Shown here: positions 8,341-64,000 of the stretch, piece by piece
Numbering within the stretch: position 1 is the first letter of the stretch
Layout of the letters: the number at the start of each line of letters is the position of its first letter
Source: Stegostoma tigrinum
Taxonomy: Eukaryota
Length of the DNA: 64,000 nt
NCBI RefSeq assembly: GCF_030684315.1
Contig: NC_081373.1
Span: 40,587,989-40,651,988 of the forward strand
Reading direction: 5' to 3'
Made by a program: the position numbers and the translations under genes
The notes under the pieces: generated by a model
Told to the model about the DNA's origin: nothing
The model's database searches: none
What the model saw: the letters and a program-made list of their open reading frames with translations, nothing else

Positions 8341-8666
8341 TTATCCAAAAGAACATTTGACATCATCCTAATGGGTGATGCCTCGTTATCAAGCTTTCGA
8401 GATCCAAATGTAACGATAAATAGTTTTATTTTACACCAATAACTACATTGCAAAGTCATTTATCAGTAAAATTGCTCACCAAGAAAGGTATACAATTTAT
8501 GTTGTTGTAAATTAGAGAAGTGATACTGTCATTTAAAAATTGACCCGGACAGAATATTAACTTTATTTCTGAATTCCAAAATCAGTGCAGAAATTCAACT
8601 CACAGACCTGAGCCAAGACACCTTCTAGCTTTGTTGAACTGAGAAACTAAAGTAACCTAAAAGCTT

Positions 8667-8897
8667 CAGAGATAATAGGAACTGCAGATGTTGGTGAATC
8701 TGTGATAACAAGGTGTAGAGCTCGATGAACACAGCAGGCCAAGCAGCATCAAAGGAGCAGGAAGGCTGACGTTTCGGGCTTAGACCCTTCTTCAGAAAAA
8801 TAAATTTTCCTGAAGAAGAGTCTTGGCCTGAAACGTCAGCCTTCCTTCTCTTCTGATGCTACCTGGCCTGCTGCGTTCATCCAGCTCTACACCTTGC
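8667..8897. mobile_element. Palindromic PLE family A mini-insertion (two head-to-head pLTR ends)
   Basis: The two arms are reverse complements. 14-bp TSD TAACCTAAAAGCTT at 8653-8666 and 8898-8911. Confidence 0.9.
8765..8795 (-). ncRNA. Minimal type-I hammerhead ribozyme motif; mirror copy on + at 8810-8840
   Basis: CUGAAGA-aGGGUcuaaGCCC-GAAAC-GUC^AGC: intact core boxes, stem II and palindromic ACGU stem III. Stem I is very short. Confidence 0.65.
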
Positions 8898-8919
8898 TAA
8901 CCTAAAAGCTTGAATGTTT

Positions 8920-10309
8920 GTGATCGGAGATAATGGGAACTGCAGATGTGGGAGATTCCAAGATAACAAAGTGTGAGGCCGGATGAACACAGCAGACCAA
9001 ACAGCATCTCAGGAGCACAAAGGCTGACGTTTCAGGCCTAGACCCTTCATCAGAGAGGGGGATGGGGAGAGGGCTCTGAGATAAATAGGGAGACAGGGGG
9101 AGGCGGACCGAAGATGGAGAGAAAAGAAGATAGGTGGAGAGGAGAATATGGGTGGGGAGGTAGGAAGGGGATATGTCAGTCCAGAAGGACGGACAGGTCA
9201 AGGAGATGGGATGAGGTTAGTAACTTTCCCCCCACAGTGGTTGAGAACGTCCTTGACCGTGTCTCCCGCATTTCCTACAACACATCTCTCACACCCCGCC
9301 CCTGCCTCAACCGCCCTAAGAGGATCCCCCTCGTTCTCACATACCACCCCACCAATGTCCGGATACAACGCATCATCCTCCGACACTTCCGCCATCTACA
9401 ATCCGACCCCACCACCCAAGACATTTTTCCATCCCCACCCTTGTCTGCCTTCCGGACAGACCACTTTCTCCGTGACTCCCTTGTCCGCTCCACACTCCCC
9501 TCCAACCCTACCACGCCCAGCACCTTCCCCTGCAACCACAGGAAGTGCTATACTTGCGCCCACACCTCCTCCCTCACCCCGATCCCAGGCCCCAAGGTGA
9601 CTTTCCATATTAAGCAGATGTTCACCTGCACATCTGCCAATGTGGTATACTGTATCCACTGTACCCGGTGTGGCTTCCTCTACATTGGGGAAACCAAGCG
9701 GAGGCTTGGGGACCGCTTTGCAGAACACATCCACTCGGTTCGTAATAAACAACTGCACCTCCCAGTCGCGAACCATTTTAACTCCCCCTCCCATTCCTTA
9801 GATGACATGTCCATCATGGGCCTCCTGCAGTGCCACAATGATGCCACCCAAAGGTTGCAGGAACAGCAACTCATATTCCGCTTGGGAACTCTGCAGCCCA
9901 ATGGTATCAATGTGGACTTCACAAGCTTCAAAATCTCCCCTTCCCCCACTGCATCCCAAAACCAGCCCAACCTGTCTCTGCCTCCCTAACCTGTTCTTCC
10001 TCTCACCCATCCCTTCCTCCCACCTCAAGCCAACCTCCATTTCCTACCTACTAACCTCATCCCACCTCCTTGACCTGTCCGTCCTTCCTGGACTGACCTA
10101 TCCCCTCCCTACCTCCCCACCTACACTCTCCTCTCCACCTATCTTCTTTTCTCTCCATCTTCGGTCCGCCTCCCCCTCTCTCCCTATTTATTCCAGAACC
10201 CTCTCAGCATCCCCCTCTCTGATTAAGGGTCTAGGCCCAAAACATCAGCTTTTGTGCTCCTGAGATGCTGCTTGGCCTGCTGTGTTCATCCAGCTCCACA
10301 CTTTCTTAT
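8920..10309 (+). mobile_element. PLE family A: 3' part (GIY-YIG + pLTR, about 9220-10309) preceded by an inverted pLTR (8920-9220)
   Basis: ORF 9114-9989 contains CNHRKCYTC...VVYCIHC...YIGETKRRLGDRFAEH. 11-bp TSD CTTGAATGTTT at 8909-8919 and 10310-10320. Confidence 0.93.
9023..9055 (-). ncRNA. Minimal hammerhead ribozyme motif in a PLE pLTR
   Basis: cuCUGAUGA-aGGGUCuaGGCCU-GAAAC-GUC^AG. Confidence 0.65.
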
Positions 10310-11767
10310 CTTGAATGTTTTTTTATTTTGTTTGTTACTCAATTCTCTTTCTCATTTTCTATTCTAGCTAATTGATGATCAATGAACCCTTGATACAATA
10401 TCTGTCCCTACAGATAAAGTAGGAACTTATTCTTAACCTGGTCAACACATTTGTACAAATTTTAGCATTCTCTTGTCCATTTCTGTAATAAAATGTAATT
10501 TCAGAATCAAAGAATCGTAGAATGGTACACCTCTGCAAAAGATTCAATCAGGTTCATCAGGCATGTCCTGTCTTTTTCAAATCCATGCTGGCTGTCCATC
10601 CGTGTCAAGAAGTTCAGCCAGTCAATCTGTCATGTCACAATGGGGATTTCAAGCTGTCTGGCCTCTAAATTCTGGGTTTTTGTTTTCTTCAATTGCAGAG
10701 TAACATGCTCCATCTTTGAAAATCCAAAAGCAAGATTCTTAAATCAAGGCAAATTTGGTAACTAATGGCTTGGGTGACTTCTATGTTTTCCCCTGCTTCT
10801 TTTAAAACCCAGGCACAGCAAAGATACACTGATGTCAATGTTTATGTTAATGACAAATTTTATTAGCATCAAAGACTAAACTGGTCAAAATTGAAATTCA
10901 ATGATTCAGAACTCAAAAGTTGAGCTGGACAAGTTCAAAACATTTCTTCGTCACATAAAATCTCAGTGTAAGCCAAAAGTACAAAACACTTACCATTTAC
11001 TACCCTTGAACAGACTGAACCTACAATCTCTATCCCAGAGAGGAAAAAAAGTAAAGAGGCTCAAGTAGTTTCTGGTTTAACACTATAATGATTGAAGTTT
11101 GAAATCAAAGTTCACTTTATCCTAGCTCCTTAAAACTGAGAGATCCCACACCATAACACTCACTTATGTAGTAATTTGCAATTGCATTGTGTTCCTGCAA
11201 TTAATTAGCTGTTGTTGTACCAGTGTGTACAATCAGTGCTGCTAAAACTCACTTTAAATGATGAGTCTGATAGGTCAAACTATTGATCAAATTTCCTGAC
11301 TAAACACAAAATTTAAATAGAACTTACCAGCAAGCAGTAGGAGCTGTCTGGAGAAGTGTCTGTCTGGCACCATTCAACATCCATCCAACTTTGATTTGTA
11401 CAGCAATGTCTCTTTCAAGAACACACAATCAAGTATCACACAGTGCAGTTATTTGGAGTCCTGCCCAATTTTAGTGAAGCTATGATTGGAGCACAACATG
11501 GAAAGAATTGGCTCTATTATTCCAGTTCTTAAAATCGGAAAAAAAAATCTCATATTTACCATAGTGTTGACATTTGAAGCCTCAAAAAATTTCTTCAAAA
11601 CTGGGTTTGATTCATAATCTGAGTACAAAAGTATATTGTCCTGTGGCAACCATTGGTCACCATTATGATTTTTCATCAGCTGCCAAAGAAAAGTGTGGGT
11701 TTATCTTAACCCCCTGTACGCATTCACATCACAGCAGGTGTCACCTGTTTAATTCCTTGTACCCAGT

Positions 11768-22151: not shown

Positions 22152-22572
22152 TGTAATGATTGTAACGAGGTTAGCTGGGTAGACCTCATAGAATATGAGA
22201 TAACAAGGTGTGGAGCTGGATGAACACAAGCAGGCCAGGCAGTATCAGAGGAGCAAGAAAGCTGATGTTTCAAGTCAGGACCCTTCTTCTGAAGAAGGGT
22301 CCTGACCCGAAATGTCAGCTCTCTTGCTCCTCCAATCCTGCAATGTTCATCCAGCTCCACACCTTGTTATCTCATAAATGTCAGTTCCCTGATTGGACCA
22401 GATTAATAGACCCCATCAGGGAGTCCGGGCTGACAGATATAAACAGGAGAGTCAGAGGTTCTGTTCACTTGGATCTGGCTCGAAGGGAGCTGGATCGGTG
22501 TCAAGGATCCTCCATGTGTAAATAAAAGGTGATTTGGTAACTAGGGATATTGGCCTCTGTGGAGTTATTTCA
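22152..22572 (+). mobile_element. Solo LTR of the Gypsy family at 51827-56456
   Basis: TGTAATGATTG...GAGTTATTTCA termini; 5-bp TSD CTAGG at 22147-22151 and 22573-22577; internal TATAAA and AATAAA. Confidence 0.88.
22200..22370. mobile_element. Palindromic PLE mini-insertion inside the solo LTR
   Basis: Arms fuse at ccttcttctgaagaagg. Degenerate TSD ctcatagaatatgag / ctcataaatgtcag. Hammerhead motif on + at 22289-22319. Confidence 0.85.
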
Positions 22573-24249: not shown

Positions 24250-24252
24250 CTA

Positions 24253-24878: not shown

Positions 24879-27249
24879 CTACTTTCAACTTCCGCCAACA
24901 CCACAGCTGGCCCTTTCAAAGTCGCAATGCCAACAGTATTTTCCGACTCTGATTCAATTACTCATTAATCCAAATGATGTACAACACTACCTTCAATTGA
25001 GTTAATGGAGGCTACCTTTCATTCTTTTAAAAAATAATCAGTTGAATTTATTTTGTCATCAGGCTAGAAGGCAAAATAAATGGCTCCAACTCACAGGACT
25101 TCACTGTGTGAAATCAACGCGATTTCTACCTAAAACAGATGAGAAATAAACTCACAGTCCACACATTTATTGATACTAAAAATGCATCTTTGTTAAATTA
25201 ATGCCTTAGCCCATTCAACAGGAGCCATGTGGATATCCTGATGACGCCATCTATGTTGCCAGTAATGTAGTGGACTCTATTTTGAGGCTCACTGTTAGTG
25301 ACTTGTGTTATGAAAAGCAAGATGATGATTAAAAGGAGTGGAAATTACTCACTTATAAAGTCAGAACTGCTGGACCCACAGAATTTTAAAGGGAATTGGG
25401 TTGAAATAAAACAAACAAAATTTGCAGGAAATATTCTCAAAGTAGCTTTTCTGGAAACAAGGGCAGCTGGATGGTAAAATAAAGGGAACGAGCCTGAGGT
25501 GAATATAATACTGGCAGCCAGAGGATTCTAAATTAGGAGTTAAAATATCAGCATGAAATATATTGAAGTCATTTGTCTTTACTTTGTGCCAAATTTATAT
25601 CCTCCTCTCTGATGCATTTTTTGCTGATGTTTGAGTCCAATGAATGGATTTGACATTACATCTAGTGAGTTTGCATTTGATGGGAGAGGCAAGACATTAA
25701 ACGGTTATTGATTAAAACAAAAGGTGTTAACATTCCAGGACATTTTGTACATGGTACCAAGTATCCCATTCTTTTTGACAGAGGGTCTGGAAACCCATGA
25801 ATTTGGAAAAGGAAATCTAGTTCCAACAGGCAGTGGTAAAGCATGGGTCACGATAGAGTTACATCAAGCATTCTGTCTATTCCTCTGGCACTTTCCATTC
25901 AGATGGAAAGGGCCACTTCTGCCTTCTCACATCAAATGGTGATGTTTCCATGCTACCCCGGGGTTTCCACCCTTTATACTCTCCACACTTTTGTGTGGAA
26001 TATATGATACAAAACTTTATAAAGAAAAGATAATCAATTCTGAAAAGAGAGTCCATTGACTTCCAGGAAAACCTACTTCCTCTTCCAGGAGCAGGGGAGG
26101 TGATATACTAAATGTTCTCCCAGAGTTCACCCAACATCCTCTCTGCCAAACTGACTTTCCGGTTCACAGTTGAGAGAGATACAACTGAATTATCCTGCTG
26201 GCCTGTCACATAGATCCTGGCAGAGCAGAAACATATTTGTATGCCACGCAGGTTTCCATAAACCTGTGAAGAAAATGAATTAACCATGGAAACGACCTAT
26301 TTGTGTCTGACCTGTGTATGCTGTATCCTTAATAAGATTGCCAGAAAAAGGAATGGGAGAAATTGGCATCAATATACAACCTAATGCAAATATGAATGCA
26401 GTGGCTCGTCGCTGCTGATTAGAAGCAAAGACTAGCTCCCCCTGACTACCACACACAAATTCCCAGCTGCCACTCACTCGAATCCTACCAACAACATTCT
26501 TTGGGTTTCAATTTATTCTGCTGACTCATGAGTTTTACCAGTATTTAATTAAAGCAATAAGTGGAAGTAAATTAGGAAAAGCATCATGTTGTAACAATTT
26601 TTTTATACCTAGCTGTTCAAATAGATTATGCCACCCTCCAGAAGCAGGTCAGTCTTGAACCTGGATCTTCTTACCCAGAGAAAGGGTCTTTGCCACAAGA
26701 TCTCTCAGTGATCAACTCATTGAGCAATATGCCTCATTAGTCTTGCCAAGTGTGCAGTATGAACAAAATTGAGAAGGAAATGAAGAAAGGTAACCTAGGT
26801 ATGTGGTCAATCCAAAAGAAAAGGAAATTTAAGAAAGCAGAAAGATCCCAGGTTCAGTTATAACCTCAATGTCAGTGAGTTTGTTTTGCTGCAATTGGAA
26901 AGCTAGAGACAATTGTCCTTCACAGCTTTCAGAAGTTAAGTTATTGTTGCTTATATAGTCTCAAATTTAAAAATATTCCACCAGTTAAAAGGTAGTGTGA
27001 TTTTCCCCTGCACTGAAAGATATACCTTGATATATTCAAGAGCAATAACAGACCACAGTTTTATTAACTCTGCTAATAATGTGTTACATCCAGAAAAGAA
27101 GCAGTTAAATATCATTAACCTATCTGCTACTTGTGAATAACCTGATTATAAATAACTGAAAAGGACTTTTAAAAGTGACACTGGACAGTACTTTTATTGT
27201 GCAAAAGTCTTCTAAGTCTTTGTGTCTGAAACAAAGCTAAGACCCTCCT

Positions 27250-27934
27250 AGATAACAAAGTGTGGAGCTGGATGAACTCAGCACGCCAAGCAGCATCTTA
27301 AGAGCACAAAAGCTGACGTTTCGGGCCTAGACCCTTCGTCAGAAAAGAGGGATGGGGAGAGGATTCTGAAATAAATAGGGAGAGAGGGGGAGGCGGACTG
27401 AAGACAGATAGAGGAGAAGATAGGTGGAGAGGAGAGTATAGGTGGGGAGGTGGGGAGGGGGTATGTCAATCCGGGGAGGACAGACAGGTCAAGGGGGTGG
27501 GAGGAGGTTGGTAGGTAGGAAATGGAGGTGCGGCTTGAGGTGGGAGGAGGGGACAGGGGAGAGGAAGAACAGGTTGGGCAGGCGGGACAAGCTGGGCTGG
27601 TATTGGGATGCAGTGGGGAGACGGGAGATTTTCAAGCTGGTGAAATCCACATTGATATCATTGGGCTGCAGGGTTCCCAAGTGGAATATGAGTTGCTGTT
27701 CTTGCAACCTGAGGCTGGCATCATTATGACACTGCAGGAGGCCCAGAATGGACATGTCGTCCAATTAATGGGAGGGGGGAGTTGAAATGGTTCACGACTG
27801 GGAGGTTCAGTTGTTTAGGTCTAGGCCCGAAACCTCAGCTTTTGTGCTCCTAACATGCTGCTGGGCCTGCTGTGTTCATCTAGCTCCACACTACGTTATC
27901 TCGGATTCTCCAGCATCTGAAGTTCCCATTATCT
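27250..27934 (-). mobile_element. PLE family A 3' end (minus, to about 27812) plus an inverted pLTR arm (+, about 27817-27934)
   Basis: DDMSILGLLQCHNDASLRLQEQQLIFHLGTLQP on the minus strand. TSD CTAAGA(C/G)CCTCCT at 27237-27249 and 27935-27947. Confidence 0.9.
27312..27342 (-). ncRNA. Minimal hammerhead ribozyme motif, well preserved
   Basis: CUGACGA-aGGGUCuaGGCCC-GAAAC-GUC^AGC. Confidence 0.68.
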
Positions 27935-29084
27935 CTAAGAGCCTCCTGTCTTGGTTGCCCTTCATGAACACTATCAACAGAAGTTAATGTGGTCAGTATT
28001 CCACATGGGTGGTCAGTTTTGTGGGTGAAGCGAGTTGCCAGCATAGGATTTTTTAAACCAGTCTGAAAGATCGTGAAACTCGATTTACAATATATGCTTA
28101 AAATTCCTGTTTGATTTTTAAATGCTGGTAAACTAACCTCAGGTGAATAGCAGAAACCAGAAGCTAATATGTGTGTCTTTGTCCACATCTGTCCTTAAAG
28201 TAAACGTTTGAGAATTGCCATATATGTTGTTTTCATATTTTAACTCCTCATAATTTGTATTGAGCAAGTATGATGAGAAATTTTGGTCTCTATTTGATAA
28301 TGGGGAACATCTCTGTCTAGATGTCGGATCAGATTTCAAGGACAATATTGATCTGTCATTTTATTTGTTTTAAATCATGTACTTAAAAATACACCACTTC
28401 TATTTTTACTTCAGGAAGAAATCTGCAATAAATCATTGTTGATTTGCAACATCCAAGATCTCCAGTTTCAGGATAATTAACAAGTCTAGCTAGTTCATAG
28501 CTTCTGTTTTACCTCCTGAAATCTGGGACTACTCATCATGTCAGAAACAGCCATGTCCTCCAAGCATAAAGTTTCAGAATAATATTATTTATAACATAAT
28601 TCACACTAATTAAAAAGTTTGTATGATAGCAGATGGATCTGTTAAAGATAATGCACTAATGAAAGAGCTCCATCTGCTACAGTAGACACCTTTACACAAG
28701 AAGCAAATATGTAAGCAATGGTGCATTGACAGTTATCTTACATAATGTGAAAAGGTCATTTTTGCCTGTTCATGTGAAGCACATTTTTGTAGCAATGGGA
28801 GAATTTGTAATCCATCACTTTTACTTCCAAACAAATTTCTGATAACATGCCTCGTGAGAAGAAAAAAATACTAAAAATAGATACTGTGTTAACTTCAAAG
28901 AAAACAGAAGGCAGTGAAATGTGGGCGAGAAATGATACATTCAACAAATTAGAATCAAAATTAACAGGTATGGAAGAGAAGCAAAGAAGGAAGCTGAAAC
29001 AATGAGAAAATGGATCCAGCCTGTCAATCAAATAGCAAATGTACATGAATACTTGGGAAAGGAAATGTAAAATCTCGATAGTTG

Positions 29085-35689: not shown

Positions 35690-37445
35690 CCTATACCTGC
35701 GGTTTTAAAGGATGTGGCTCCAGAGATGGTGCGGACACTAGTTGAAATATTCAGGAACTGCATGGATTCTGGGAGGGTTTCAATGGTTTGGAAAGCTTAT
35801 ATTAAGACACCTTTGTTCAAGAAGAGTGGGAGACAAAAAGCAGATAATTATGGGTCAATTAGCATTTTCCCAATGATAGATATATGGTTAAAGTCCACTA
35901 TTCTAGAAGAAACAGGGAATTTAGAAAAATGTTTATGTAATCAAACAAATTCAACATGGTTTTGAGAAAGGGAAATGGTGGTTGACAAATCTGAGGATAA
36001 TATAAGTAGAACTGATAATGGGAACTGGTAGATATAGAGGATTCCAATTTCAAAAAGGCATTTAATAAGGTGCCCCATAAAAGATGATTGCACAAGATTG
36101 GAGCCCCCACTATTCGGGATACTGTATTAGCTTGTATTGAGGATGATTAACACAAATAACAGCAAGAGTTTTTATTAATATGTCCGTTTCAGTTTTAGAA
36201 AGGCATAATGAGCGTAGGGCACATGGATTAGTCCTAAGGCCTTAAATATTTACTATCTTTATTAGTATCTTCATGGAGGAGACAGACTGTGATATCTCCA
36301 AATCTGCTGATGATCCAAAATTATGTGGGAGGGCATGTTGTGATGAGGACATAAAGAATCTTTAACGGGATATATACAGGGTGAGTGAGTGGGCAAAAAC
36401 CTGGGAGATGAAGATTTTCATAAGAAAGTGAGTTCTTGCACTATGGTAGGGAGGCATAAGGCGCAACACTATTTAAATAGAGAGAAATATCAAGAAAATG
36501 CTGCACAGCGTGATTTGGAAGCTCTTGTGCATGAAACACAAATTATTAGCAAGCAGGTGCAGCAAATAATTAAGACAACAAATTGAATTTTGGATAACAA
36601 GGTGTAGAGCTGGATGAACACAGCACGCCAAGAAACATCAGATGAGTAGGAAAGCTGACGTTTCGGGTCTCGTCCTTTCTTCAGAAAAAAAAACAAATTA
36701 CCGCAAAAATCATTCTGAAGGGTCTAGACCCAAAACGTCAGCTTTCCTGCTCCTCCGATGCTGCTTGGCCTGCTGCGTTCATCCAGCTCTACACCTTGTT
36801 ATCTCAGATTCTTCAGCATCTGCAGTACCTACTATCTCTAAATTGAATTTTGGCCTCTGTTGATAGTGGCTGGAGTTTAACAGGGAAGTCTTATTATCAC
36901 TGTAATGGGTATTGGTGAGGCTGCATCTGGAGTACTTTGCAGAGTTTTGTTCCCTTTATTTAAGAATAGTGGTATTGGGAAGCAGTTCAATAGAGATTCA
37001 CTAGACTGATTTTGGAATGAAGCAGTTGACTTATCAAGAATGGATAAGCAGGTTTGTCTTTATTCATTAGAGTTTAGAAGAATAACGAATGATCTTATTG
37101 AAACATATGAGATTCTAAGGGGGCTTGACAAAGGCGGACATTGAGAAGATATTTCCACTAGTGGAGGGGGTCTTGAACTAGGATAGTTACAGATTAAATA
37201 GACTTCATTTAAAACAGATGTGAAGAATTTATTTTCCCAGAGGGCAGTAAATGTCCAGAATTTTCTACCCCAGATAGTTACAGAGGCTTTCTGCAAGTAG
37301 TGTGAAATATTAGGGAGTTGACATCCATGCTGAGTTGGCATTAAAGAGGATTTGAAGCTTGGGGCAGATCAACCATCATCTTTTTAAAGAGCAGGACAGG
37401 CTTGAGGGGTTGAATGGACTATTCCAGCTCCTATTTATGTTCTTA
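35690..37445 (+). mobile_element. Old CR1 RT fragment
   Basis: TPLFKKSGRQKADNY, FQKAFNKVPH and SKSADDPKL-like segments; decayed tail. Confidence 0.85.
36594..36839. mobile_element. Palindromic PLE mini-insertion
   Basis: 14-bp TSD AAATTGAATTTTGG at 36580-36593 and 36840-36853; A-rich filler at the centre. Confidence 0.92.
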
Positions 37446-38942: not shown

Positions 38943-39045
38943 AGATAACAAGGTGTAGAGCTTGATGAACACAGCAGGCCAAGCAGCATCAGAGGAGCAG
39001 GAAAGCTGAGGTTGCGGGCCTATACCCTTCTTCAGAAATGGGGGA
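38943..39045 (-). mobile_element. Single PLE family A pLTR arm
   Basis: agataacaaggtgtagagc...cccttcttcagaaatgggg, with a decayed hammerhead. Confidence 0.85.
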
Positions 39046-41149
39046 TTTTTAATATAGAAAAGCTGCCTCTGCCCTTTCAGCTTCTCCCAACAAGAAACAC
39101 CCAACTTTATGATGAATTCCCTACAGAGTATAATCTGCAATAGAACCTATTCTAGATATTTAATCAGAACCAAGTAAAACTCAACTATGTCAATATGGGA
39201 TCATACCAGTGAAGAGAAGTATAAGCTATGTGTTCTGTTGTAAGAAGTCACTAACATAGACAACCTATTCCAATATCATAATATATATTTTGCAGCGATT
39301 TACAATGAGACATCTTTTCCCTTGAAGGTCACCATGCTACTTCATTTTTGGGATTTTCTTTTTCCCCTCAAACCTCCACTTTCAGTAAACACATACTCAA
39401 GCTTTTTTTCTATGAATAAATTATTTCACCACACTCTCCAAACCAACACTTGGATTTTGGAGTTTGTGTCAGGTGGTTTGTTTCAAGTTAATTTGGACTG
39501 AATGTAAAATGGTTAATGTTTGATTGATAATCCATTTAATTTGCATGATTCCAAGTAATATCTAATTGAATGGGTTCACTTGCTCCTAGCAGTCAATAAA
39601 AAGCTAAAAAAGTCAGTAAATCAATGAACACCTGAGCAGAATGTGCATAATTGATCTGCAATTACTTTTTCAATACCTTCAATAACCACACAAGTTAACT
39701 ATCAGCTTATCAAATTTTGAGTCAAATACTTTTGTTATAGCAACACAAATGTTCAAATCAGGATATAGATCTTAACACAATATTCTTTTGATATTTTCAA
39801 TGTTCACTTTGAGGTGAAAAATCCATATGAGGCTTCAAATTAGATTTTCCCCCTTTTGATAAAATGGCTGTCTGGCCTTTTAATTAACCAATTATCCCCA
39901 GCTGCAATGCTGAGAACCGGAGGCGCTATATTCCCAGATGACCAATCTTGGTAATTTGTGGCATTTGCCTCCCCCCCCCCCCCACCTCAAGGTTACATAA
40001 ATCTGGGTAAAGATTATTTATTTCATTAGCACCAAATCACCTTTGTCTTGGGCATATCTAGTGACTAGCAGTAAACATCTCTCAACAGAGAATCAATCAA
40101 GGGAGGCACTGACCTTAGATAAGAAAAAGATTTACTGTATGATAATAATAAAATTACTTCGGCATAATTAGGGAGCTGGCTCAGATATATCTAGTCCCTT
40201 GAAAAACTAGAATGGGTGGAGACAAGGAGTTCTACACATTGTGACATCATGGAATGAGTGGAGCAATGCAAAATGAACATTAACCCTTTCAGACTTGTAT
40301 ACAACACCAGTTGTATGCAAGAGACTCAAGCCTCTAAACTTGAACTCTACTGCCCTTCTGCTATGAGATTACTAAAAACATTTCACTAAATGCTATTGCA
40401 ATCTAAATTTCAGGATGTTTTCTCATAGTAAATACCTTTTAAGGAGAGAGAGACATATTCTATAGTTTACATCACCACTGAATTTGTTGCCTGCACAGCA
40501 TAACATATTCCCTGCTGTTTCTATCATGAATTCAGGAAGGTAACAAATATTTCAGATTGCTTTTGATGCTGACGTCTTTGAGGCTGTGCTTGCAAATGAT
40601 GCTTATGTGCTTCCCATCACTCCATTTGAGCGTTCTGACAACTGGCTGCATAAATTAGTTCTACTTTTGCTGTCATGCAAACGTAAATAAAATATTGAAT
40701 TCATTTTCCAAAAGTTGCATGAAAGAATCAAAACCCAATCATTTTGCCATTAGCCATGATCCTACTAAATCGCAGAGCAGGCTCTGGAGGTGCTGAATGG
40801 TTTTCTCCAGATTCTAATTCTTATTGTCTTATGAGCTTTTCTTCAAGATTGATGATTTTCGATTTTACACTGGCAAACGAACAGTTTCAGCACACAATGA
40901 TTTTTTTGCCTTCTTTCTGTTAACTGTGACAAAATGTCCTTGTGTTGTGTCAAAGGCTTTCCACTACAGCCGTTCACCTTGGCAGGATTTTGTGTTTGTT
41001 ATGTCAGAGCATCGCACAACCTATTAGTAATTACAAGGTGCTTCCGAGTATTGGTAAAGTTTACTGGCAATGCAAAATAGACTGGGAGATGGAGCTTTAG
41101 TTTAAAGTTACGAATTAATTAACACAAAGATATCAAGGAATGTAACAAA

Positions 41150-43550
41150 CTGCACACAAGATGTGGAAGCTTCTGAATGCCACTGTGATTCAGAGCAAAC
41201 ACGTCTGCAGTTGCAGGACCTTCAGCTCAGAGTCAATGGACCGGAGGCCAAGTTGCAGGTGCTGCAGAAGGGGGAAGGTTGCCTAGACACCTGGTTCCAG
41301 AAGACAATCATTCCCTTTAATCTACAGTCATCTGATTTGGCCAGTGCTCAGGAACGGGCGGGGAAGGCGGGGGAGATGTGTGATTACCGAGAGACTGCGT
41401 ACGAGATCCACATTGTTCAACTGGTTTGAAGTCCTTTCAGCTTGTAGTAAGTGCTGCTAACTGATCATGACACCATGCTTCAGGAAACCATTCAAGCTGA
41501 GGCGCTAACAGGAACAAAATGGTACTAGGGTGCAGAATAGCGAAGGGACTGACATTGTTCCCTGCAGCAAATAGCACTCATCCAAGCGGCTCTGTTGTTT
41601 GCCTAGTGCCAGTGTATGGGACGTCCGCTCTAAACTGGAGAAGAAATTGCAGAGGAAGTGGACAGATCCAGTGAACGTGTTGTAGGTAGGTACCAATGAT
41701 ATAGATAGAACTACGAAAGAGGTCCTGCTGACGCTTTATCAGAAATTAGGGTCTGAATTAGAAAGCAGAGCCTCTAAAGTAATCTCTGGAATTATGATTT
41801 TGAACCACATACAAATTAACATAGGGCAATTAACATTTGAGAAACTAATGCATGGCTCAAAGACTGGTCTGGTAGAAGTGGGATCCAGTTCATATGGGGT
41901 AATGAAATGTGAGGCTGGATGAACACAGCAGGCCCAGCAGCATCTCAGGAGCACAAAAGCTGACGTTTCGGGCCTAGACCGCCCGAAACATCAGCTTTTG
42001 TGCTCCTGAGATGCTGCTGGGCCTGCTGTGTTCATCCAGCCTCATTTCATCATCTTGGATTCTCCAGCATCTGCAGTTCCCATTATCACTGATCCAGTTC
42101 ATATGGCACTGGCACCAGCACTGGGGAAGGTGCGGTTTGTATTGTTGTGATGGTCTATACCTGGAGTGGCAAGCTGTATGACTGGAAAAATAGAAAGGCC
42201 TTTAAACTAATCAAGGGGCAAGGGATCCAGCTCAGATTGATGTTGCAAATAAAGGGGTAGAGTCAAGACAGGGGAGCAAAAGAACAATGTGGGAAATGAA
42301 GGTTAGAGAATTTCTGGACTGGACAGAACAGAAAACTCTAGGAATATACCCAACTGTCAATTCTAAGCATTGCAAAGATAACTAAGGCAAAACCAAACAA
42401 ACAATCTGTATCTGAATGCACAAAGAATGCATAATAAAAGTTTTTTTTTAAATTGATAGGCACACTTCAAAGGAAATAAATGTGATCTAATTGCCATTTT
42501 AATTGCATAGGGCTGCAGTTGATCAAGATTATGTCCTGAATATTAGCAAGTAAATGACATTCAACAACAGGAAGCATGGTCAAGATGGAGGGGTTAGCAC
42601 TCTTAAATCAACCATGACATTCATGCTGTAGTTAGAGATGACCTAGGTTCGGGAGATCAGATGTAGAATCGATTTGAGTGGATATTGGGAATTGTGGAAA
42701 GAAATCACTGGAGCAAAGTGATCTACACTATTCCTAACAATGACCACAATGTTGGGCGAAGTAAGCAAGAAGCAAAATTGTATGTGATGAAGGGATGACA
42801 ATCACCAGGTGACTTTAATTTGAGGAAAACATTGCATGAAGAAAAAGCATTTAATTGTGCAAAGGTGAATCAAAGATCGGATGATTATCCAGAATATAAA
42901 GAACAAGACGCTCGGTGAAAGGTTAATAATGCAAAAAACAGTGAGAGGAAGCTAGAACTTTAAAATTGGATAAAAAGTGCTTTTTTTTTTGCAGGTAGCC
43001 ATAATACAAAAGAATATAGAGTAACTGTTGGGTGTCTAGAGAGTCGGAATGGGGAGTTAGTAGTAAATAACAAAGAAATACTGTATGAATTGAACAAATA
43101 TTTTGCTTATGAATGAATATAATCTGTTTATTCAAGGGAGGGAGGCAGAAGACAGAACATTGTAGGGTATTTAACATGACATTTGTCATGGACCAGATTT
43201 TATAATTAAATATTTAAGGAGATTATAGTTGAGAAATTTGGAAAAATCCAAGGTAGTTGGGACTCGTTAACATGGTTTTGGCAAAGGAAAATCCTATTTA
43301 ACTGTCTGGAGATCTTTGAAGGAGTAAAATGGACTGTACTTGGATTTCCAAAAGGCATTTGACAGGGTGCAACAAAGATTATTGCATGAATTAAAAGCAC
43401 AGACAGTGCTCAAAGACAATAAATTGGTTGGTTAACAGAAAACAAATGTTCTGTTTTATAAATGGGTCACATTGGCAGTATGTGACAAATATTGTCCCAT
43501 GTAGGTCTACATTGGGGCCTCAAAATTTCACAATTTATATCAATGTAATT
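41150..43550 (+). mobile_element. Old CR1 with ORF1 (SGNH esterase-like) and deleted ORF2 pieces
   Basis: RLCCLPSASVWDV, VGTNDIDR and DGLYL are SGNH motifs, followed by YLNA (APE start) and RT remnants. Confidence 0.75.
41898..42090. mobile_element. Palindromic PLE mini-insertion, young
   Basis: Near-perfect arms fused inside hammerhead stem II. Perfect 16-bp TSD GATCCAGTTCATATGG at 41882-41897 and 42091-42106. Confidence 0.95.
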
Positions 43551-43551
43551 T

Positions 43552-45724: not shown

Positions 45725-45764
45725 ACAGGCATTTCGTCACCATACTAGGTGACATCATCAGTGC
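45725..45764 (-). ncRNA. Hammerhead motif of PLE family C
   Basis: gcaCUGAUGA-uGUCACCuaguauGGUGAC-GAAAugccugu: 6-bp stem II; stem III and the cleavage triplet are mutated. Confidence 0.6.
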
Positions 45765-47338: not shown

Positions 47339-48442
47339 AGATAATAGGAACTGTCAATGCTGGAGTCAGAGATAACAGTGCTGAGCTGGATGAACACAGC
47401 AGGCCAGGTAGCATCAGGGGAGCAGGAAAGCTGATGTTTCATTCTGAAGGGTCCCGACCCAAAACGTCAGCTTTCCTCACCACCCCACCAACCTCCAGAT
47501 CCAACACATCATCTTCCAACACTGCTACCATCTGCAATCAGACCCCACCACCAAAGACATTTTTCCCACCCCACCCTTATCTGCTTTCCAGAGGGACCAC
47601 TCTCTTTGTGACTCCATTGTCCGCTCCACACTCCCTCCAGCCCCATCAAACCTGGCACTTTTCCCTGCAACCAAAGGAAATGCTACATCTGCCCTGACAC
47701 CCCTCTCACCCCCATCCCAGGCCCCAAGAAGACGTTCCACATCAAGCAGATGTTCACCTGCACATGTGCTAATGTGATATACTGCATCTGCTGTTTCTGT
47801 TGTGGCCTCCTCGACATCAGGGAAACCAAGCGGAGACTTGGAGACCGCTCTGCAGAATACCTACAGTCGGTTCACACTGAACAATTGTACCTCCCAGTCG
47901 CGAACCACTTCAAATCCCCCTCCCATTCCTCAGACGACGTGTCCATCCTGGGCTTCCTGCAGTGCCACAATGATACCACCCGAAGGTTGCAGGAACAGCA
48001 ACTCATATTCCGCCTGGGAACCCTACTGCCCAATGGTATCAGTGTGAACTTCATAAGCTTCAATCTTCCCCCCACCCACCCCCCCACATCCCAAAACCAG
48101 CCCTGCCTGTCCCCGTCTCCTTAACCTGTCCTTCTTCCCACACCTAGCCTCATCCTGCCCCCATGACCTGTCCGTCCTCCCTACCTACACTTACCTTTAC
48201 CGGCTCCATCCCTGCCTCTTTGACCTGTCTGTCTCCTCTCCACCTATCTTCTCTTCTATCCACCTCCGCCCCCTCTCCCTATTTATTTCAGAACCCCCTT
48301 CCCCTCCCCAACTTCTGAAGAAGGGTCTAGGCCTGAAATGTCAGCCTTCCCGCTCCTCTGATGCTGCTTGGCCTGCTGTGTTCCTCCAGCTCTACACCGT
48401 GTTATCTCAGGTTCTCCAGCATTGGCAGTTCCTACTATCTCT
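47339..48442 (+). mobile_element. PLE family A 3' end (GIY-YIG + pLTR) with an inverted pLTR at its 5' side
   Basis: VIYCICCFCCGLLDIRETKRRLGDRSAEY; hammerhead motif at 48315-48345; no TSD seen. Confidence 0.9.
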
Positions 48443-57803: not shown

Positions 57804-60800
57804 AGGCAAAGGCCTAGTGATATGTGCTAGTGGTATTATTGCTAGACTATTAATCCAGAAACCCAATTAATTTTCTGGGGACTGGTGTTCAAATCCTACC
57901 AGGGCTGAGTGGAATTCGAATTCAATTAAAAAAAGTCTGGAATTAAGACTCTACTGATGACCATGAAACCACTGTCCATTTTCGGGGAAAAACTCGAGGC
58001 CCACTAATGTCCTTCAGGGAAGGAAATCTGCCATCCTCACCTGGTGAGGCCTACATGTGACTCCAGACCCACAGCAATGTGCTTGACCCTCAATTACCCT
58101 GTGAAATGGCCTAGCAAGCCACTGAGTTGTAACAAACACTACAAATTCTCAAAGAAATGAAGCTGGACAGATCACCTGGCATCAAGTGAGGCAGTGGAAA
58201 AGACAACAGCAGAAACAGCCCGGTTGACTGTGCAAAGTCCTCCTCATTAACGTCCGGGGGCTAGTGCCAAAATTGGGAGAGCAGTCTCACAGACTCTTCA
58301 AGCAACTGCCTGACATGGTCATAGTCACAGAATCATACCTTTAAAATTTCCCAGACACCACCATCACCATCCCTGGATATGTCCTGTGCAGCCAGCAGGG
58401 TTGGCGCACAGTGGTATACAGTTGGGATGGTATTGCCCTGGGATTCCTCAACATTGACTCCAAACCCCATGAAGTCTCCTGGCTTCAGGTTAAACATGGG
58501 CAAGGAAACATGTTGCTGAATGTCAGATACCTTCCTTCCTCAGCTGATGAATCCATACTCCTCCACTTTGAATAACACTTAGAGGAAGCACTGACGATGG
58601 CAAGGGCACAAAATGTACTCTGGGTGGGGGATTTCGAAGCCCACCACCAAGAGTGGCTGGGCAGTAGTACTGCTGATCAGGTCCTAAAGGACATAGCTGC
58701 TACACCGGGTCTGCAGCAGGTGGTGAGGGAACCAACAAGACAGAAGAACGCCTTATTCTTGACCTTTATTCTTACTAATCTGTCAGCTGCAGATCCATCT
58801 ATCCATGACAGTATCAGTAAGAGTGACCATTGCACAGTCCTTGTGGAGACAAAGTCCGACCTTCACATCGAGAACACGCTCCATCGTGTTGTATGGCACT
58901 ATCACTGTGCTAAATGGGACAGACTTCACACAGATCTAGCAACTGAAGACTGGGGCATTCATGACGTGCTGTGGGCCATCAACAGCAGCAGATTGATACT
59001 CCAGCATATCACTCACTCAACCATTATTATTAAGCCAGGGGATCAAACCCAGACAGTTCAATTAAGATCGTTAATGAGGAGGGGATGCCAGCATCAGCAT
59101 GACACATATCTGAAATTGATGTCTCAAGCTGGTGAGGCGACTAAAGAGGACTACTTCCATGTCAAACAGCAAATGCAGCAAGTGATAGACAAATCAAAGC
59201 AATCCTACCACCGATGGATCAGATCCAAACTCTGCAGAGATAATGGGAACTGCAGATGCTGGAGAATCCAACATAAAGTGTGGGGCTAGATGAACACAGC
59301 AGGCCAAGCAGCATCTTAGAAGCACAAAAGCTGCCTCTGCCTTCATCAGAAAAGGATCTGATGAAGGGTCTAGGTCCAAAACGTCAGCTTTTGTGCTCCT
59401 AAGATGCTGCTTGGCCTGCTGTGTTCATCCAGCCCCACACTTTATTATCCCAAACTGCAGTCCTGCCACATCCAGTCGTGAATGGTGGTGGACAATTAAA
59501 TAATTTACTGGGGGAGGAGGCTCCATAAATATCCCCATCCTGAATGATGGAAGAGCCCAGTATATCAGTGCAAAAGATAAGGCTAAAGCATTCGCAGCAA
59601 TCTTCAGCCAGAAGTGCCAATTCAATGAACCATCTCGGCCTCCTCCAATGGTCCCCAGCGTTATAGATACTAGTCTTCAGCCAATTCAATTCATTCCATG
59701 TGTCATCAAGGAAGAGTTAGAGACACTGGATACTGCAAAGGCTACAGGCATTGACAAAATTCTGGCAATGGTACTGAAGACTTGTGCTTCAGAACTTGCT
59801 GCTTCCCTAGCCATACTATTCTAGTACAGTTACAACAGTGATATCGACTCAACAGATGTGGAAAATTGCCTAAGTATGTTCTCTACACAAAAAAACAGGA
59901 TAAATCCAACCTGGCCAATTACCACCCCATTAGTCTAGTATCAATCATCAGTAAAGTGATGGAAGGTGTCAACAACAGTGTTGTCGAGTAGCCCCTACTC
60001 AGCAATAACCTGCGCAGCGATGCCTAGTTTGTGTTCCATCAGGGCCACACAGCTCCTGACCTCATGACAGTGTTGCTTCAAACATGGACAAAAGAGCTGA
60101 ATTCCAAAGTGAGGTGAGAGTGACAGTCCTTAACATCAAGGTTTATTCGACCAAGTGTGGCATCAAGGAACCCTAGCGTAACTGGAATCGATGAGTATCA
60201 GGGGGCAAACTCTCCACCAGTTGGAACCATACCTGACACATAGAAAGACGGTCGTGGTTGTTGGAGGTCAGTCATCTCCGCTTCAGTACAGCTCTGCAGG
60301 AGTTCCTCAGGGTAGTGTCCTCAGCCCAACCATCTTCAGCTGCTCCATCAATGACCTTCCCTCCATCACAAGGTCAGAGGTGGGCATGTTTGCTGATGAG
60401 CGTACAATGTTCAGCACCATTCATGTCTCCTCAGATACTGAAGCAGTCCATGTTCAAATGCAACAAGTTTAGGAAAATGTCCAGGTTTGGGCTGACAAGT
60501 GGCAAGTGACATTTGCACCACAAAAATGCCAGGCTATGACCATCATCAATAAGAGACTACCTATCGCCCCTTGACATTCAATGGTGTTACTGTCACTGAA
60601 TCCCTCACCATTGATATCTTGGGGATTATCATTGACCAGAAACTCAGTTGGATTCACCACATAAACACAATGGCTACAAGAGCAGCCAGAAGCTAGGAAT
60701 ACTGGGGGAAGTGAATCACCTCCTGTCTCAAAGCCTGTCCACCATCTACAGGGCACAAGTCAGGAGTGTGATGGTATACTCCCCACTTGCCTGGCTGAGT

Positions 60801-61535: not shown

Positions 61536-62420
61536 TGGTTACAAGAGCAGGACAGAAGCCAGGAACACTGTCACAAGTAACCCACCCCCTGAGTCCCCAC
61601 AGCCTGTCCACCATCAACAAGGAGTGCTGGAATATTCCCCACTTGCCTGCATGAGTTTACCTCCATCAACACTCAAGAGGCTTGACACCATCCAGGACAA
61701 ATCCGCCTGCTTGAATGGCACCTTAGAATCGTACAATCCCTCCCCTGCGGAAGCATGCCATTCAGTCTATCAAGTCCATATTGACCGTCTAAAGAGCATC
61801 CCACCTAGACCCATCCCCCTACACAATCCCAGTAACCTTGCATTTCCGACAGTCAATCAGTCTAACCTACACATCTTTGGACTGTGGGAAGAAACCAGAA
61901 AGCTCAGAGGGAACCCAAACAGATACAGGAAGAACATGCAAACTCCACACAGACAATCACCTGGGTCCCTAGCACTGTGACGCAGCAGTGCTAACCACTT
62001 CTGCCTCCGTGACCCTCATTGACCACATTCACAAGCATCTATTCACTCCACCACTGACACTCAGGAGCTGCATTGTGTACAATCTATAAAATGCACAGCA
62101 GAAATTCATCAAAGATCTTTAGACAGCACCTTCCAAACCCACAATCACCTCCAGCTTGAAGAACAATGGCAGAAGAAACACCAGAATCTGCAAGTTCTTC
62201 TGCAAACCACTCACAGTTCTGACTTGGAAATATGTCACCATTCCTCCACTGTCACTGGGTCAAAATCCTAGAATTCCCTCCCTAAGGGCATTGTGGATCA
62301 ACCTACATCACATGGACTGCTGCAGTTCAAGAAGGCAACTCACTGCCATCTTCTCTAGGATAAACGGTGACAGACAATAAATGCTGGCCAGCCAGCAACA
62401 CACAAGTGAATATGAAAAAA
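61536..62420 (+). mobile_element. LINE family 2 3' fragment, split by an HE1-like SINE
   Basis: LEYSPLACMS..TLKRLDTIQDK; tail aataaatgctggccagccagcaacacacaagtgaatatg(A)n. Confidence 0.85.
61724..62015 (-). mobile_element. HE1-like V-SINE (tRNA head, V domain, CR1/HER1-derived tail)
   Basis: Minus strand: agtggttagcactgctgcgtcacagtgctagggacccag...gtctgtgtggagtttgcatgttcttcc...ggtttcttcccacagtccaaagatgtg...gattcta. Confidence 0.85.
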
Positions 62421-62432
62421 GGCGGAGATGAG

Positions 62433-62931
62433 AGCGAGATAACACGGTGCGAAACTGGATGAACACAGCGGGCCAACCAGCATCAGAGGAGCAGGAAAGC
62501 TTGACATTTCAGGTCGGGTCCCGCTTCATCCAGCTTCACACCGTGTTATCTCAGATTCTCCAGCATCGGCAGTTCCTACTATCTCTGTGACAACTTTAAC
62601 CCCGCTGCGAAACCTCTTCAAGGATGCCTTCCTTAAAGAAGCTATCCCCCTCCCTCCGAAAAAACCTCAGTTCATCCCTCTCCCACTGCAACCCTCTTGT
62701 ACTTTCTTTGGCCTTGAAACTGCTTGACCACGTCCTAAAGCAAATCGGATACTACAGCCACATTTCTCAGTACCTGCCTACGGAACCGGATAATCCCCTC
62801 AAAGGAAGAAGGGTCCAGACCCGAAACATCAAGCTATCCTACTCCTCTGATGCTGCTTGGCCTGCTGTGTTCATCCAGCTTCACACCGTGTTATCTCAGA
62901 TTCTCCAGCATCGGCGGTTCCTAGTGTCTCA
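62433..62931 (+). mobile_element. Miniature PLE: inverted arm, pLTR end, ORF N-terminus, second pLTR
   Basis: 8-bp TSD GAGATGAG at 62425-62432 and 62932-62939; direct repeat at about 62525-62586 and 62871-62930; ORF start MPSLKKLSPSLRKNLSS at 62624. Confidence 0.8.
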
Positions 62932-64000
62932 GAGATGAGCGTTTGTTTTTGTTTTTCTCTTAGAGTCACTAGTCTGTTGAATTCTCCTCCCCAAAGACAG
63001 TGGAGGCTGAGTCATTGAACACATTCAATGCAGAGTTTGAAGAGTTCTCAATTGATAGGGGCAGGCTGGAAAGTAAGAGTTTTATTCACAATCAGTCTAG
63101 CCATGATTGTATAGTATAGCCGAGTTGGCTCAGGAGGGTCAATGCCCTACTCCAGATATTAATTCTTATGTTCTTAAGTGTTTCTTTTCAGCAGCTTAAA
63201 GCTTCCCCATGGTGGCTCCCTCAGTTGGGCACTGAATGCCTGATATTGAGAGAATTCCCCACATTGAGGCCACGGGAAAACTCAACAGGGTTTGCTGCAC
63301 AGCTTTCAGGAGGCACAGCAGACTCATTTGAAACCCAAAAATACATCCCAAGCCTTCATTGAATGCCAGTGAGTTCAGGGATAATTGGCTTTAAGTGGTC
63401 ATTAAAGAACGATTAACTGACAGTCTTCCATCAATATGTGGGATTCCCACATCGGGTCTTGGCTGACATTCAGTACAGCTTTCCTGCTGCCCAGGATCAC
63501 ATGCAGATATTCCCACCAGATTTTCCTAGCACCCACCATCGTCCCTGTTCCTGTGTGCTCTCTAAATTGCCCCCAGGTCTTTGAAGAGCAAAGTTGTCTG
63601 TCATGCAGAAATAAAGATAGTCCTGGAAATCTGTGCTATAAGTTGTCCCTAATGGTCTTAACTCTCTGAAATATTGGCAAACGCAATAATGATCCTGGTA
63701 GTTCTACAGGCCTTTCAGAAACTGCCATGCCTACCTCTGTTTGTTGTTCCTGCCAGACATCATTAGCTCGAAATAACCAGCTTACTTTGACGTCCACTAT
63801 TCATGTTGAACTGCTTAAAATTGCAGAAAAACTGTGTAAATCCAACATTCTGAAATCAGCATCAATAGCCTTTTTATAATCAGGAAGAGGAAAATATGTC
63901 TATAAATTCTTAAAGAACGTTGACATTCAATTTAGCAAAATTTTCAAACAGTTTCAGCTGAAAAAATTGCAGGAACAGAGTGTTATCTCTGTAAAATCCA

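What the first reader, a model, noticed from the sequence alone, without database searches (positions are those of the whole stretch)
8653..62939. Family of head-to-head Penelope insertions, many reduced to 170-250 bp hammerhead-centred palindromes with long TSDs
Seen: nine insertions (8667-8897, 8920-10309, 22200-22370, 27250-27934, 36594-36839, 41898-42090, 47339-48442, 59238-59449, 62433-62931) have pLTR 3' ends pointing outward at both junctions. Eight have TSDs of 8-16 bp (one degenerate), so each of those palindromes arose in a single event. Five have no coding sequence, and their centres all differ, so they are not copies of one MITE master. Established: inverted pLTRs at PLE 5' ends are known. 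Inference: both nicks of a staggered cut prime reverse transcription on the pLTR RNA and the two cDNAs join tip to tip. That would deposit hairpin/dsRNA-forming units at about one per 7 kb here.
Basis: partly seen in the sequence, partly recalled or inferred. Interest (0 to 1): 0.8.

Follow-up and report, generated by a model that had tools for sequence, protein, structure and literature searches.

The report
Head-to-head Penelope insertions in a shark
Nine insertions of a Penelope-like jumping gene in this shark DNA each consist of two copies joined head to head inside one target duplication; this is real and one was shown to have arrived as a single unit, but it is the already published hallmark of these elements rather than a new kind of thing.

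Summary
All nine head-to-head pairs sit at the stated coordinates. Seven have clear target-site duplications (TSDs) of 8-16 bp, one TSD is degenerate and one insertion has none. Five insertions are 171-246 bp palindromes without coding sequence.

New evidence here: contigs of a related species (about 7% diverged), from two samples, lack exactly insertion #6 plus one copy of its 16-bp TSD. That palindrome therefore arrived in one event.

Both arms of every insertion belong to the same subfamily. Outer ends fall at two discrete sites about 35 nt apart, and 7 of 9 insertions have one end of each type. This is the published Penelope-like element (PLE) "tail".

Inner ends cluster at or just upstream of the minimal hammerhead (14 of 16 truncated arms within 31 nt). 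None lies at the predicted ribozyme cut.

The architecture (inverted 5'-truncated copy, one-sided tail, one TSD) was published in 2013 and 2021. A purified PLE protein was shown in 2024 to cut and extend both target strands from two internal start sites.

This scan already reported the same pattern on another piece of this genome.

dsRNA formation, editing and small RNAs could not be tested because no RNA runs were available.

The parts
8653..8911 (.). Insertion #1. TSD 8653-8666 and 8898-8911 (TAACCTAAAAGCTT). Palindrome 8667-8897. Left arm (minus sense) has the tail; right arm is short. 12-nt A/T filler at the centre. Both arms keep the CUGANGA and GAAA boxes.
   Evidence: (I2)
8909..10320 (.). 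Insertion #2. TSD CTTGAATGTTT at 8909-8919 and 10310-10320. Inverted arm 8920-9222 (303 bp, with tail). Sense body 9223-10309 carries the GIY-YIG end of the ORF and a 3' pLTR ending at the short site.
   Evidence: I1
22197..22374 (.). Insertion #3. 171-178 bp palindrome with both ends short. TSD only degenerate (CTCATAGAATATGAG vs CTCATAAATGTCAG). Oldest pair of arms (79% identity).
   Evidence: I11
27237..27947 (.). Insertion #4. 13-bp TSD with 1 mismatch at 27237-27249 and 27935-27947. Body on the minus strand (27250-27817, EN-coding remnant, short end). Sense arm 27818-27934 starts at ref 125 (numbering on the natural copy 48200-48442) and carries the tail.
   Evidence: I4
36580..36853 (.). 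Insertion #5. 14-bp TSD at 36580-36593 and 36840-36853. 246-bp palindrome; left arm short, right arm with tail. About 26-30 nt of A-rich filler at the centre. Present in the related species.
   Evidence: I3
38943..39056 (-). Solo (one-armed) copy of the same family. Short 3' end; inner end about 11 nt upstream of the CUGA box. Present in the related species.
41882..42106 (.). Insertion #6. 16-bp TSD at 41882-41897 and 42091-42106. 193-bp palindrome whose arms are 98% complementary over 64 nt. Left arm short, right arm with tail. Arms start at ref 125 and ref 132, so neither holds a full hammerhead. Absent, together with one TSD copy, from contigs of the related species.
   Evidence: records 5, 18, 23; I8
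47339..48442 (.). Insertion #7. Inverted arm 47339-47441 (tail). Sense part runs from the CUGA box (ref 113-155), is joined to the EN-coding end of the ORF, and ends in a full 3' pLTR with tail. No TSD.
   Evidence: I9
59225..59460 (.). Insertion #8. TSD CCAAACT(C)TGCAG. 212-bp palindrome whose arms are 97% complementary over 61 nt. Left arm has the tail and an 11-nt net loss inside the hammerhead; right arm is short.
   Evidence: I10
62425..62939 (.). Insertion #9. 8-bp TSD GAGATGAG. Inverted arm 62433-62522 (short end). Then a sense fragment ref 182-243 (62523-62586), a 218-nt non-coding spacer and a pLTR 62805-62931 with tail. This is a partial tandem of a unit of about 345 bp.
   Evidence: (I5)
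48200..48442 (+). Natural copy used as the coordinate reference ('ref'). TATTTAT at ref 81. CUGAAGA box at ref 116. GAAA at ref 136. Predicted ribozyme cut after ref 143. Short 3' end at about ref 205-216. Tail from about ref 209 to 243.

Best explanation
What it is. These are ordinary integration products of an endonuclease-encoding Penelope-like element (PLE) family of a shark. Each was laid down in one event between two staggered nicks 8-16 bp apart.

How it works. The 3'-OH of each nick primes reverse transcription on a copy of the element's pLTR RNA. Each cDNA starts at one of two internal start sites about 35 nt apart. Both sites lie in a repeated TATCT(C) motif, and the stretch between them is the 'tail'.

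The two cDNAs grow towards each other. They mostly stop at or just 5' of the minimal hammerhead and are joined 3' end to 3' end, with 0-30 nt of filler. The result is a head-to-head pair inside one TSD.

When both cDNAs are short, the product is a 170-250 bp palindrome that lacks the element's putative TATA-like promoter.

Shown: the anatomy, the TSDs, the single-event origin (empty site), the discrete outer ends and the clustered inner ends.

Inferred: priming at both nicks, the use of two template copies, and the reason the cDNAs stop at the hammerhead (run-off at the RNA 5' end, or a reverse-transcriptase pause at helix II).
For: Anatomy.
- Nine outward-facing pairs.
- TSDs of 8-16 bp at the exact borders in 7 of 9, against 0.2% of random intervals.

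Single event.
- The related species' contigs, in three runs from two samples, join 41881 directly to 42091. They lack #6 plus one TSD copy.
- The same contigs hold both outer ends of the older #5.

Same source for both arms.
- Arms of one insertion always share a subfamily (9 of 9, p about 0.008).
- They are more alike than arms of different insertions (0.855 vs 0.817, permutation p 0.0015).

Ends.
- Outer ends fall at two discrete sites; 7 of 9 insertions have one of each.
- Arm lengths can be very unequal (303 vs 1087 bp in #2; 568 vs 117 bp in #4).
- Fourteen of 16 truncated arms end within ref 105-135; none ends at the predicted cut after ref 143.
- A conserved TATTTAT lies 34-35 nt upstream of the CUGA box.

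PLE identity.
- The ORF at 9114-9989 has a GIY-YIG match.
- Its 83%-identical whale-shark homologue has RVT_1 followed by GIY-YIG.

Literature.
- Inverted pLTR, one-sided 31-bp tail and 9-bp TSD are called the typical Penelope structure (PMC3846280; PMC8557442 fig. 2).
Against: - No direct observation of priming on both strands in this family.
- Two template copies are needed and nothing here shows where they come from.
- The excess of one-long-one-short pairs (7 of 9; P = 0.09 under independent choice) is not predicted. The in vitro work saw no strand difference in start site.
- #7 has no TSD and #3 has only a degenerate one.
- The sample is nine insertions in one window.
- The hammerhead is recognised only by core motifs. 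No Rfam hammerhead model matches.
Confidence: 0.7

Rival explanations
1. Self-priming or fold-back, the model offered for rotifer Penelope elements. An antisense (or sense) template folds back on a palindrome at the junction and primes its own copying, so the second arm is a copy of the first.
For: - Arkhipova et al. 2013 (PMC3846280) favour it because palindromes occur at inverted junctions.
- A short CTTC.GAAG palindrome overlaps the CUGA box here.
- The short insertions #1, #3 and #8 are nearly symmetric at the centre.
Against: - A copied arm should end where its template ends, yet 7 of 9 pairs have different outer ends, each at a discrete start site.
- Arms of #2, #4, #7 and #9 are very unequal, and the shorter arm still starts at the 3' start site rather than duplicating junction-adjacent sequence.
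- Fillers of 12-30 nt separate some arms.
Confidence: 0.12
2. Palindromic non-autonomous masters (MITE-like or retrozyme-like units) that are transcribed and copied as whole palindromes.
For: - Four short palindromes have a similar layout, with both arms reaching the CUGA box.
- #9 contains a 1.2-unit tandem of about 345 bp, close to the 363-bp mean retrozyme consensus reported for a chondrichthyan (bioRxiv 10.64898/2026.07.22.740005).
Against: - Centres, fillers, arm break points and tail placement differ in every copy, and two subfamilies are involved.
- In the relative, about 300 paralogous contigs diverge just upstream of the CUGA box with low agreement (0.43), so no shared centre is seen.
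- A copied left arm would not be expected to end exactly at a reverse-transcription start site.
Confidence: 0.08
3. Two independent insertions, the second homing in opposite orientation next to the 5' end of the first.
For: PLE endonucleases recognise their own sequence in vitro (PMC11167929, citing Pyatkov 2004). #1 and #2 lie 22 bp apart.
Against: - One TSD encloses both arms in 7 of 9.
- The empty site in the relative lacks both arms of #6 at once.
- Arm subfamilies always agree.
- No internal TSD is seen.
Confidence: 0.03
4. Cut-and-paste DNA transposon MITEs whose terminal inverted repeats happen to resemble PLE ends.
For: Palindromic shape and flanking duplications.
Against: - TSD length varies from 8 to 16 bp.
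- Termini fall at two alternative positions.
- The longer members carry PLE coding sequence.
Confidence: 0.01

Closest known systems
Canonical EN+ Penelope-like elements (Penelope/Poseidon type) as described in Drosophila virilis, Adineta vaga and fish (PMC2377424, PMC3846280, PMC8557442)
   Same: - An inverted 5'-truncated copy abuts the unit, with one short TSD around the whole.
- A 30-40 bp tail sits at one end only.
- The pLTR carries a minimal hammerhead.
- There is heavy 5' truncation.
- RT followed by a C-terminal GIY-YIG is seen in the closest homologue.
   Different: - Here most copies are reduced to two opposed pLTR ends without any ORF.
- TSDs are somewhat longer (8-16 bp, against 8-10 bp in the rotifer examples).
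- The family is from a shark and very high in copy number.
PAc (Poseidon of Anolis carolinensis) in vitro system, Frangieh et al. 2024 (PMC11167929)
   Same: - Two adjacent internal RT start sites whose spacing equals the tail.
- Both target strands are cut and extended.
- Hammerhead cleavage is not needed. In line with this, none of the arms here starts at the predicted cut.
   Different: - That paper does not connect two-strand extension with head-to-head genomic copies.
- It saw no strand bias in start site, whereas 7 of 9 pairs here are mixed.
- The start-site motif here is a repeated TATCT(C), not reported there.
L1 twin priming (Ostertag and Kazazian 2001; from my own knowledge, not read here)
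   Same: The second nick's 3'-OH primes on RNA instead of on the first cDNA. The result is an inverted segment inside one TSD.
   Different: In L1 the two segments are adjacent parts of one RNA (an inversion without duplication). Here both arms copy the same 3' region, so two template copies are required.
Minimal hammerheads of PLEs and animal non-LTR retrozymes (PMC4209133, PMC7229834, bioRxiv 10.64898/2026.07.22.740005)
   Same: - CUGANGA box, one unpaired base, a helix II closed by G-C, then GAAA and a palindromic ACGU before the cut site.
- Pairs of such motifs 100-700 bp apart on opposite strands were already noted in Schistosoma.
   Different: - Retrozymes are head-to-tail tandems. Only #9 has a partial tandem.
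- No Rfam hammerhead model matches these motifs, and helix I is weak.

Membership tests
EN+ Penelope-like elements | Single ORF with reverse transcriptase followed by a C-terminal GIY-YIG endonuclease | tested here: met
   - The window ORF 9114-9989 matches GIY-YIG at E 0.0014, 19.3 bits, just under the 22.6 cut-off.
- Its 83%-identical homologue P0001 has RVT_1 at residues 1-121 (22.7 bits, under its cut-off).
- P0001 then has GIY-YIG at residues 355-432 (23.2 bits, above the cut-off).
- The RT clade was not placed on a tree.
EN+ Penelope-like elements | pLTRs from partial tandems, often with an adjacent inverted 5'-truncated copy, the whole flanked by one TSD | tested here: met
   Nine inverted pairs. 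TSDs in 7 of 9. A partial tandem in #9.
EN+ Penelope-like elements | [quoted passage not shown] | tested here: met
   A tail of about 35 nt is present on one arm only in 7 of 9 insertions, on both arms in #7 and on neither in #3.
EN+ Penelope-like elements | Minimal hammerhead ribozyme motif in the pLTR | tested here: inconclusive
   - The core features listed in PMC4209133 are present in 7 arms.
- No Rfam hammerhead family matches, even at E up to 10.
- Helix I is 2 bp at best.
- Cleavage was not tested.
L1-type twin priming | The inverted and direct segments are contiguous, non-overlapping parts of one RNA | tested here: not met
   Both arms cover the same region, ref about 113-210. It works like twin priming but on two template copies.
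MITE / DNA transposon | Fixed TSD length and fixed termini | tested here: not met
   TSDs of 8, 11, 13, 14, 14, 16 and about 12 bp. Two alternative termini.
Animal non-LTR retrozymes | Head-to-tail tandem units each carrying a hammerhead | tested here: not met
   Only #9 shows 1.2 units of about 345 bp. The other eight are head-to-head pairs.

The most novel reading that the evidence does not exclude
PLE integration may be obligately two-sided and asymmetric. A dimeric particle would prime on both nicked strands, one protomer starting at the upstream TATCT site and the other at the downstream one; that would give the one-long-one-short rule. Most events would then be run-off copies of only the first 95-130 nt of the transcript. 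If so, the commonest product of this element family is a promoter-less palindrome centred on the hammerhead. The very many copies in shark genomes would then be a natural record from which nick spacing, start-site choice and junction chemistry could be read.
Probability: 0.25. Interest if true: 0.55.

Novelty: new member of a known kind. Interest (0 to 1): 0.3.

Why it matters
The integration mechanism of Penelope-like elements is still largely unknown. These genomic copies agree with the only in vitro study: both strands are primed, there are two start sites, and ribozyme cleavage is dispensable.

They also add three points that a genome-wide census could test:
- a precise empty site for a coding-free palindrome;
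- inner ends clustered at the hammerhead;
- a possible long/short pairing rule.

For genome annotation, such palindromes should be called PLE fragments, not MITEs or microRNA precursors. Rfam microRNA models gave sub-threshold hairpin matches to them.

Tried and rejected
- Rfam at gathering thresholds over the whole window gave nothing. At E up to 10 over 8600-10400 it gave no hammerhead, only sub-threshold microRNA-like hairpin matches that reflect the palindromes.
- The PDB sequence search with the EN-bearing ORF found nothing relevant.
I could not fetch loci from other shark genomes to enlarge the sample or to see a full-length element.
- Pyatkov et al. 2004 is not held.
- No RNA run was listed, so expression, small RNAs and A-to-I editing could not be examined.
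- I looked for papers linking PLEs to twin priming and found none.
- My own hammerhead regular expression was too strict. It found only one of the family's motifs plus two from other families.
- I built no consensus. A natural copy (48200-48442) served as the coordinate reference.
Full report
**What is there.** I used one natural pLTR arm as a query. It also finds one clear solo copy (38943-39056, minus strand) and a weak one (44630-44671). An independent inverted-repeat search recovers all nine at 81-98% complementarity. Five insertions (#1 8667-8897, #3 22197-22374, #5 36594-36839, #6 41898-42090, #8 59238-59449) are 171-246 bp long and hold nothing but two opposed pLTR ends. Four (#2, #4, #7, #9) hold more.

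**Target-site duplications.** Read at the stated borders they are 14, 11, 13 (one mismatch), 14, 16, about 12 (one indel) and 8 bp. #3 has only a degenerate one and #7 none. In 3000 random intervals of the same lengths, an exact flank repeat of 8 bp or more at any of 121 offset pairs occurred in 0.2%.

**Identity of the element.** The sense part of #2 carries an open 291-aa frame (9114-9989) with a GIY-YIG match just under Pfam's cut-off. Its relatives are numerous in sharks and rays. The nearest is a whale-shark protein, 83% identical over 92% of the query. That protein has a reverse-transcriptase match followed by a C-terminal GIY-YIG match above the cut-off. This domain order defines endonuclease-bearing Penelope-like elements (PMC8557442).

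**The hammerhead.** The pLTR carries the features listed for minimal PLE hammerheads in PMC4209133: a CUGANGA box, one unpaired base, a 4-bp helix II closed by G-C, then GAAA and a palindromic ACGU before the cut site. One-sided G/A changes opposite U occur in helix II. No Rfam hammerhead model matches, even at a permissive threshold. Helix I is at best 2 bp, so "hammerhead" rests on core motifs only. Only 7 of the 19 arms (18 paired arms plus the solo copy) keep both boxes. #6 has no complete motif in either arm. An intact ribozyme was therefore not needed for these insertions.

**Single-event origin.** Three lines of evidence support it.
- One TSD encloses both arms in seven insertions.
- The arms fall into two subfamilies (AGCTTTTGTGCTCCTGAGATG in #2, 4, 6, 8; AGCTTTCCTGCTCCTCTGATG in #1, 3, 5, 7, 9). 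The two arms of an insertion always agree (9 of 9; chance about 0.008). They are also more alike than arms of different insertions within a subfamily (0.855 vs 0.817; permutation p 0.0015).
- A related species (coded organism B) holds about a tenth of the sampled 31-letter words of the laid stretch 36500-42200 and differs by about 7% in unique DNA. In three runs from two samples and two studies, its contigs run 40168-41881 and continue without any intervening letter at 42091-42200. The same contig goes on for a further 1100 nt beyond the laid stretch (records 5, 18, 23).

The missing 209 nt are exactly insertion #6 (193 nt) plus one copy of its 16-nt TSD. This is a precise empty site. It fits #6 having the most similar arms (98% over 64 nt).

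The older #5 is filled in that species at both outer ends, and the solo copy is present too. No orthologous site with only one arm was seen.

**Outer ends.** In sense orientation every arm ends at one of two places about 35 nt apart. One is near GTTATC(TC). The other is near ATTATCT(CT), after the stretch CTCAGATTCTCCAGCATCTGCAGTTCC. Both ends lie in a repeated TATCT(C) motif. Seven insertions have one end of each kind, #3 has two short ends and #7 two long ones.

In organism B, about 160 paralogous contigs stop matching at the short site and about 310 at the long site. Both are followed by heterogeneous T-rich sequence (table 7), so both ends are used genome-wide.

This is the published PLE "tail": a 30-40 bp extension often present at only one end (PMC8557442, fig. 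2). In Adineta vaga it is a 31-bp tail optionally present on one of the inverted pLTRs (PMC3846280). Frangieh et al. 2024 (PMC11167929) showed in vitro that it equals the stretch between two adjacent internal reverse-transcription start sites.

**Inner ends.** Positions are numbered on the natural copy 48200-48442 ("ref"), where the CUGA box is at ref 116 and the predicted cut follows ref 143.
- Nine arms end 0-11 nt upstream of the CUGA box.
- Two arms end at ref 125.
- Three arms end at ref 132-135, on the two sides of helix II.
- So 14 of 16 truncated arms end within 31 nt.
- None ends at the predicted ribozyme cut. This agrees with the in vitro finding that unprocessed RNA is the substrate (PMC11167929).

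A TATTTAT conserved in the three copies scored sits 34-35 nt upstream of the CUGA box. The main cluster could therefore be the RNA 5' end, meaning the cDNAs ran off the template. A reverse-transcriptase stop at the structured ribozyme is the alternative, and I cannot separate the two here. But the inner ends are far from random.

**Mechanism.** The geometry is that of staggered nicks leaving 3' overhangs of 8-16 nt. The plus-strand 3'-OH at the left junction continues into an antisense arm. The minus-strand 3'-OH at the right junction continues into the other arm. Because each arm begins at a bona fide start site, each looks independently initiated on RNA.

Fold-back or self-priming models were proposed for rotifer elements, on an antisense template (PMC3846280). 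They predict matching outer ends and equal arms. Here 7 of 9 pairs are mixed, and #2 (303 vs 1087 bp) and #4 (568 vs 117 bp) are very unequal. Their shorter arms still start at the 3' start site.

The purified Anolis PLE protein cuts and extends both target strands and is predicted to be a dimer (PMC11167929). Priming at both nicks is therefore the best-supported reading. It remains an inference for this family.

It differs from L1 twin priming in that both arms copy the same region, so two template copies are needed.

The excess of mixed pairs (P = 0.09 under independent choice) is only a hint and is unexplained.

**What the palindromes can do.** As RNA they would fold into near-perfect hairpins: -129 to -148 kcal/mol, 15-21 standard deviations below shuffled sequence. 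Their arms start downstream of the TATTTAT, so they lack the element's putative promoter and would need read-through transcription. No RNA run was on offer. dsRNA formation, editing and small RNAs are therefore untested.

**Not every copy is paired.** Besides the solo copy of this family, the window holds solo copies of other PLE-like families:
- 44600-44700 and 44950-45075, both on the minus strand;
- a hammerhead-like motif at 45727-45761, also on the minus strand.

Roughly 9 of 13 PLE-like insertions here are head-to-head.

**Novelty.** The head-to-head arrangement inside one TSD with a one-sided tail is described as the typical Penelope structure (PMC3846280, PMC2377424, PMC8557442). Pairs of minimal hammerheads 100-700 bp apart on opposite strands were noted in Schistosoma (PMC4209133). 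I found no paper that links two-strand extension to the inverted genomic copies, or that uses the term twin priming for PLEs. That link is a small step. This scan has already reported the same pattern on another piece of this genome, with the same verdict (s1-881875).

- the empty site in a relative;
- the clustering of inner ends;
- the TATCT(C) repeat at both start sites;
- the argument against fold-back.

**Limits.**
- The sample is nine insertions in one window.
- The species was not determined by me.

Noticed in passing
window 52422-53486: A 1.06-kb unit bounded by inverted termini of about 115 nt that are 94-98% complementary (I7 and I12). It is unrelated to the pLTR family. The interior looks like a retroelement or transposase remnant on the minus strand. 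Not identified.
   Followed up: partly
window 8898-8919: Insertions #1 and #2 lie 22 bp apart, tail to tail. Their TSDs overlap by 3 nt (CTT). This is either a local hot spot or the second event landing at the edge of the first.
   Followed up: no
window 44600-44700 and 44950-45075 (minus strand): Two solo copies of a second, distantly related PLE-like family. They share CTCAGCAGGTC.AGCAGCATCTG (direct repeat D1, 90%). The second copy has a hammerhead-like CTGAGGA...GAAA motif at 45042-45072.
   Followed up: partly
window 45727-45761 (minus strand): A third hammerhead-like motif with a 6-bp helix II (CTGATGA-TGTCACC...GGTGAC-GAAA). Presumably it belongs to another PLE family. Its context was not examined.
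   Followed up: no
window 62587-62804: A 218-nt non-coding spacer lies between a tail and the next pLTR inside insertion #9, and it is unique in the window. It is either the body of a retrozyme-like unit of about 345 bp or host sequence captured between pLTRs, as described for rotifer elements.
   Followed up: partly
window 36500-42200 (reads of the related species): Bins that hold pLTR sequence collect summed contig depths of about 1-2.9 million, against about 10-15 for unique bins. The family is therefore extremely abundant in the related species too. An 18-nt length difference lies just right of the #6 empty site.
   Followed up: no
window 8817-9046 and 8721-8884: Rfam plant and animal microRNA-precursor models give sub-threshold matches (48-53 bits, against cut-offs of 85-200) to these palindromes. 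This is a likely source of false microRNA calls in shark annotations.
   Followed up: no
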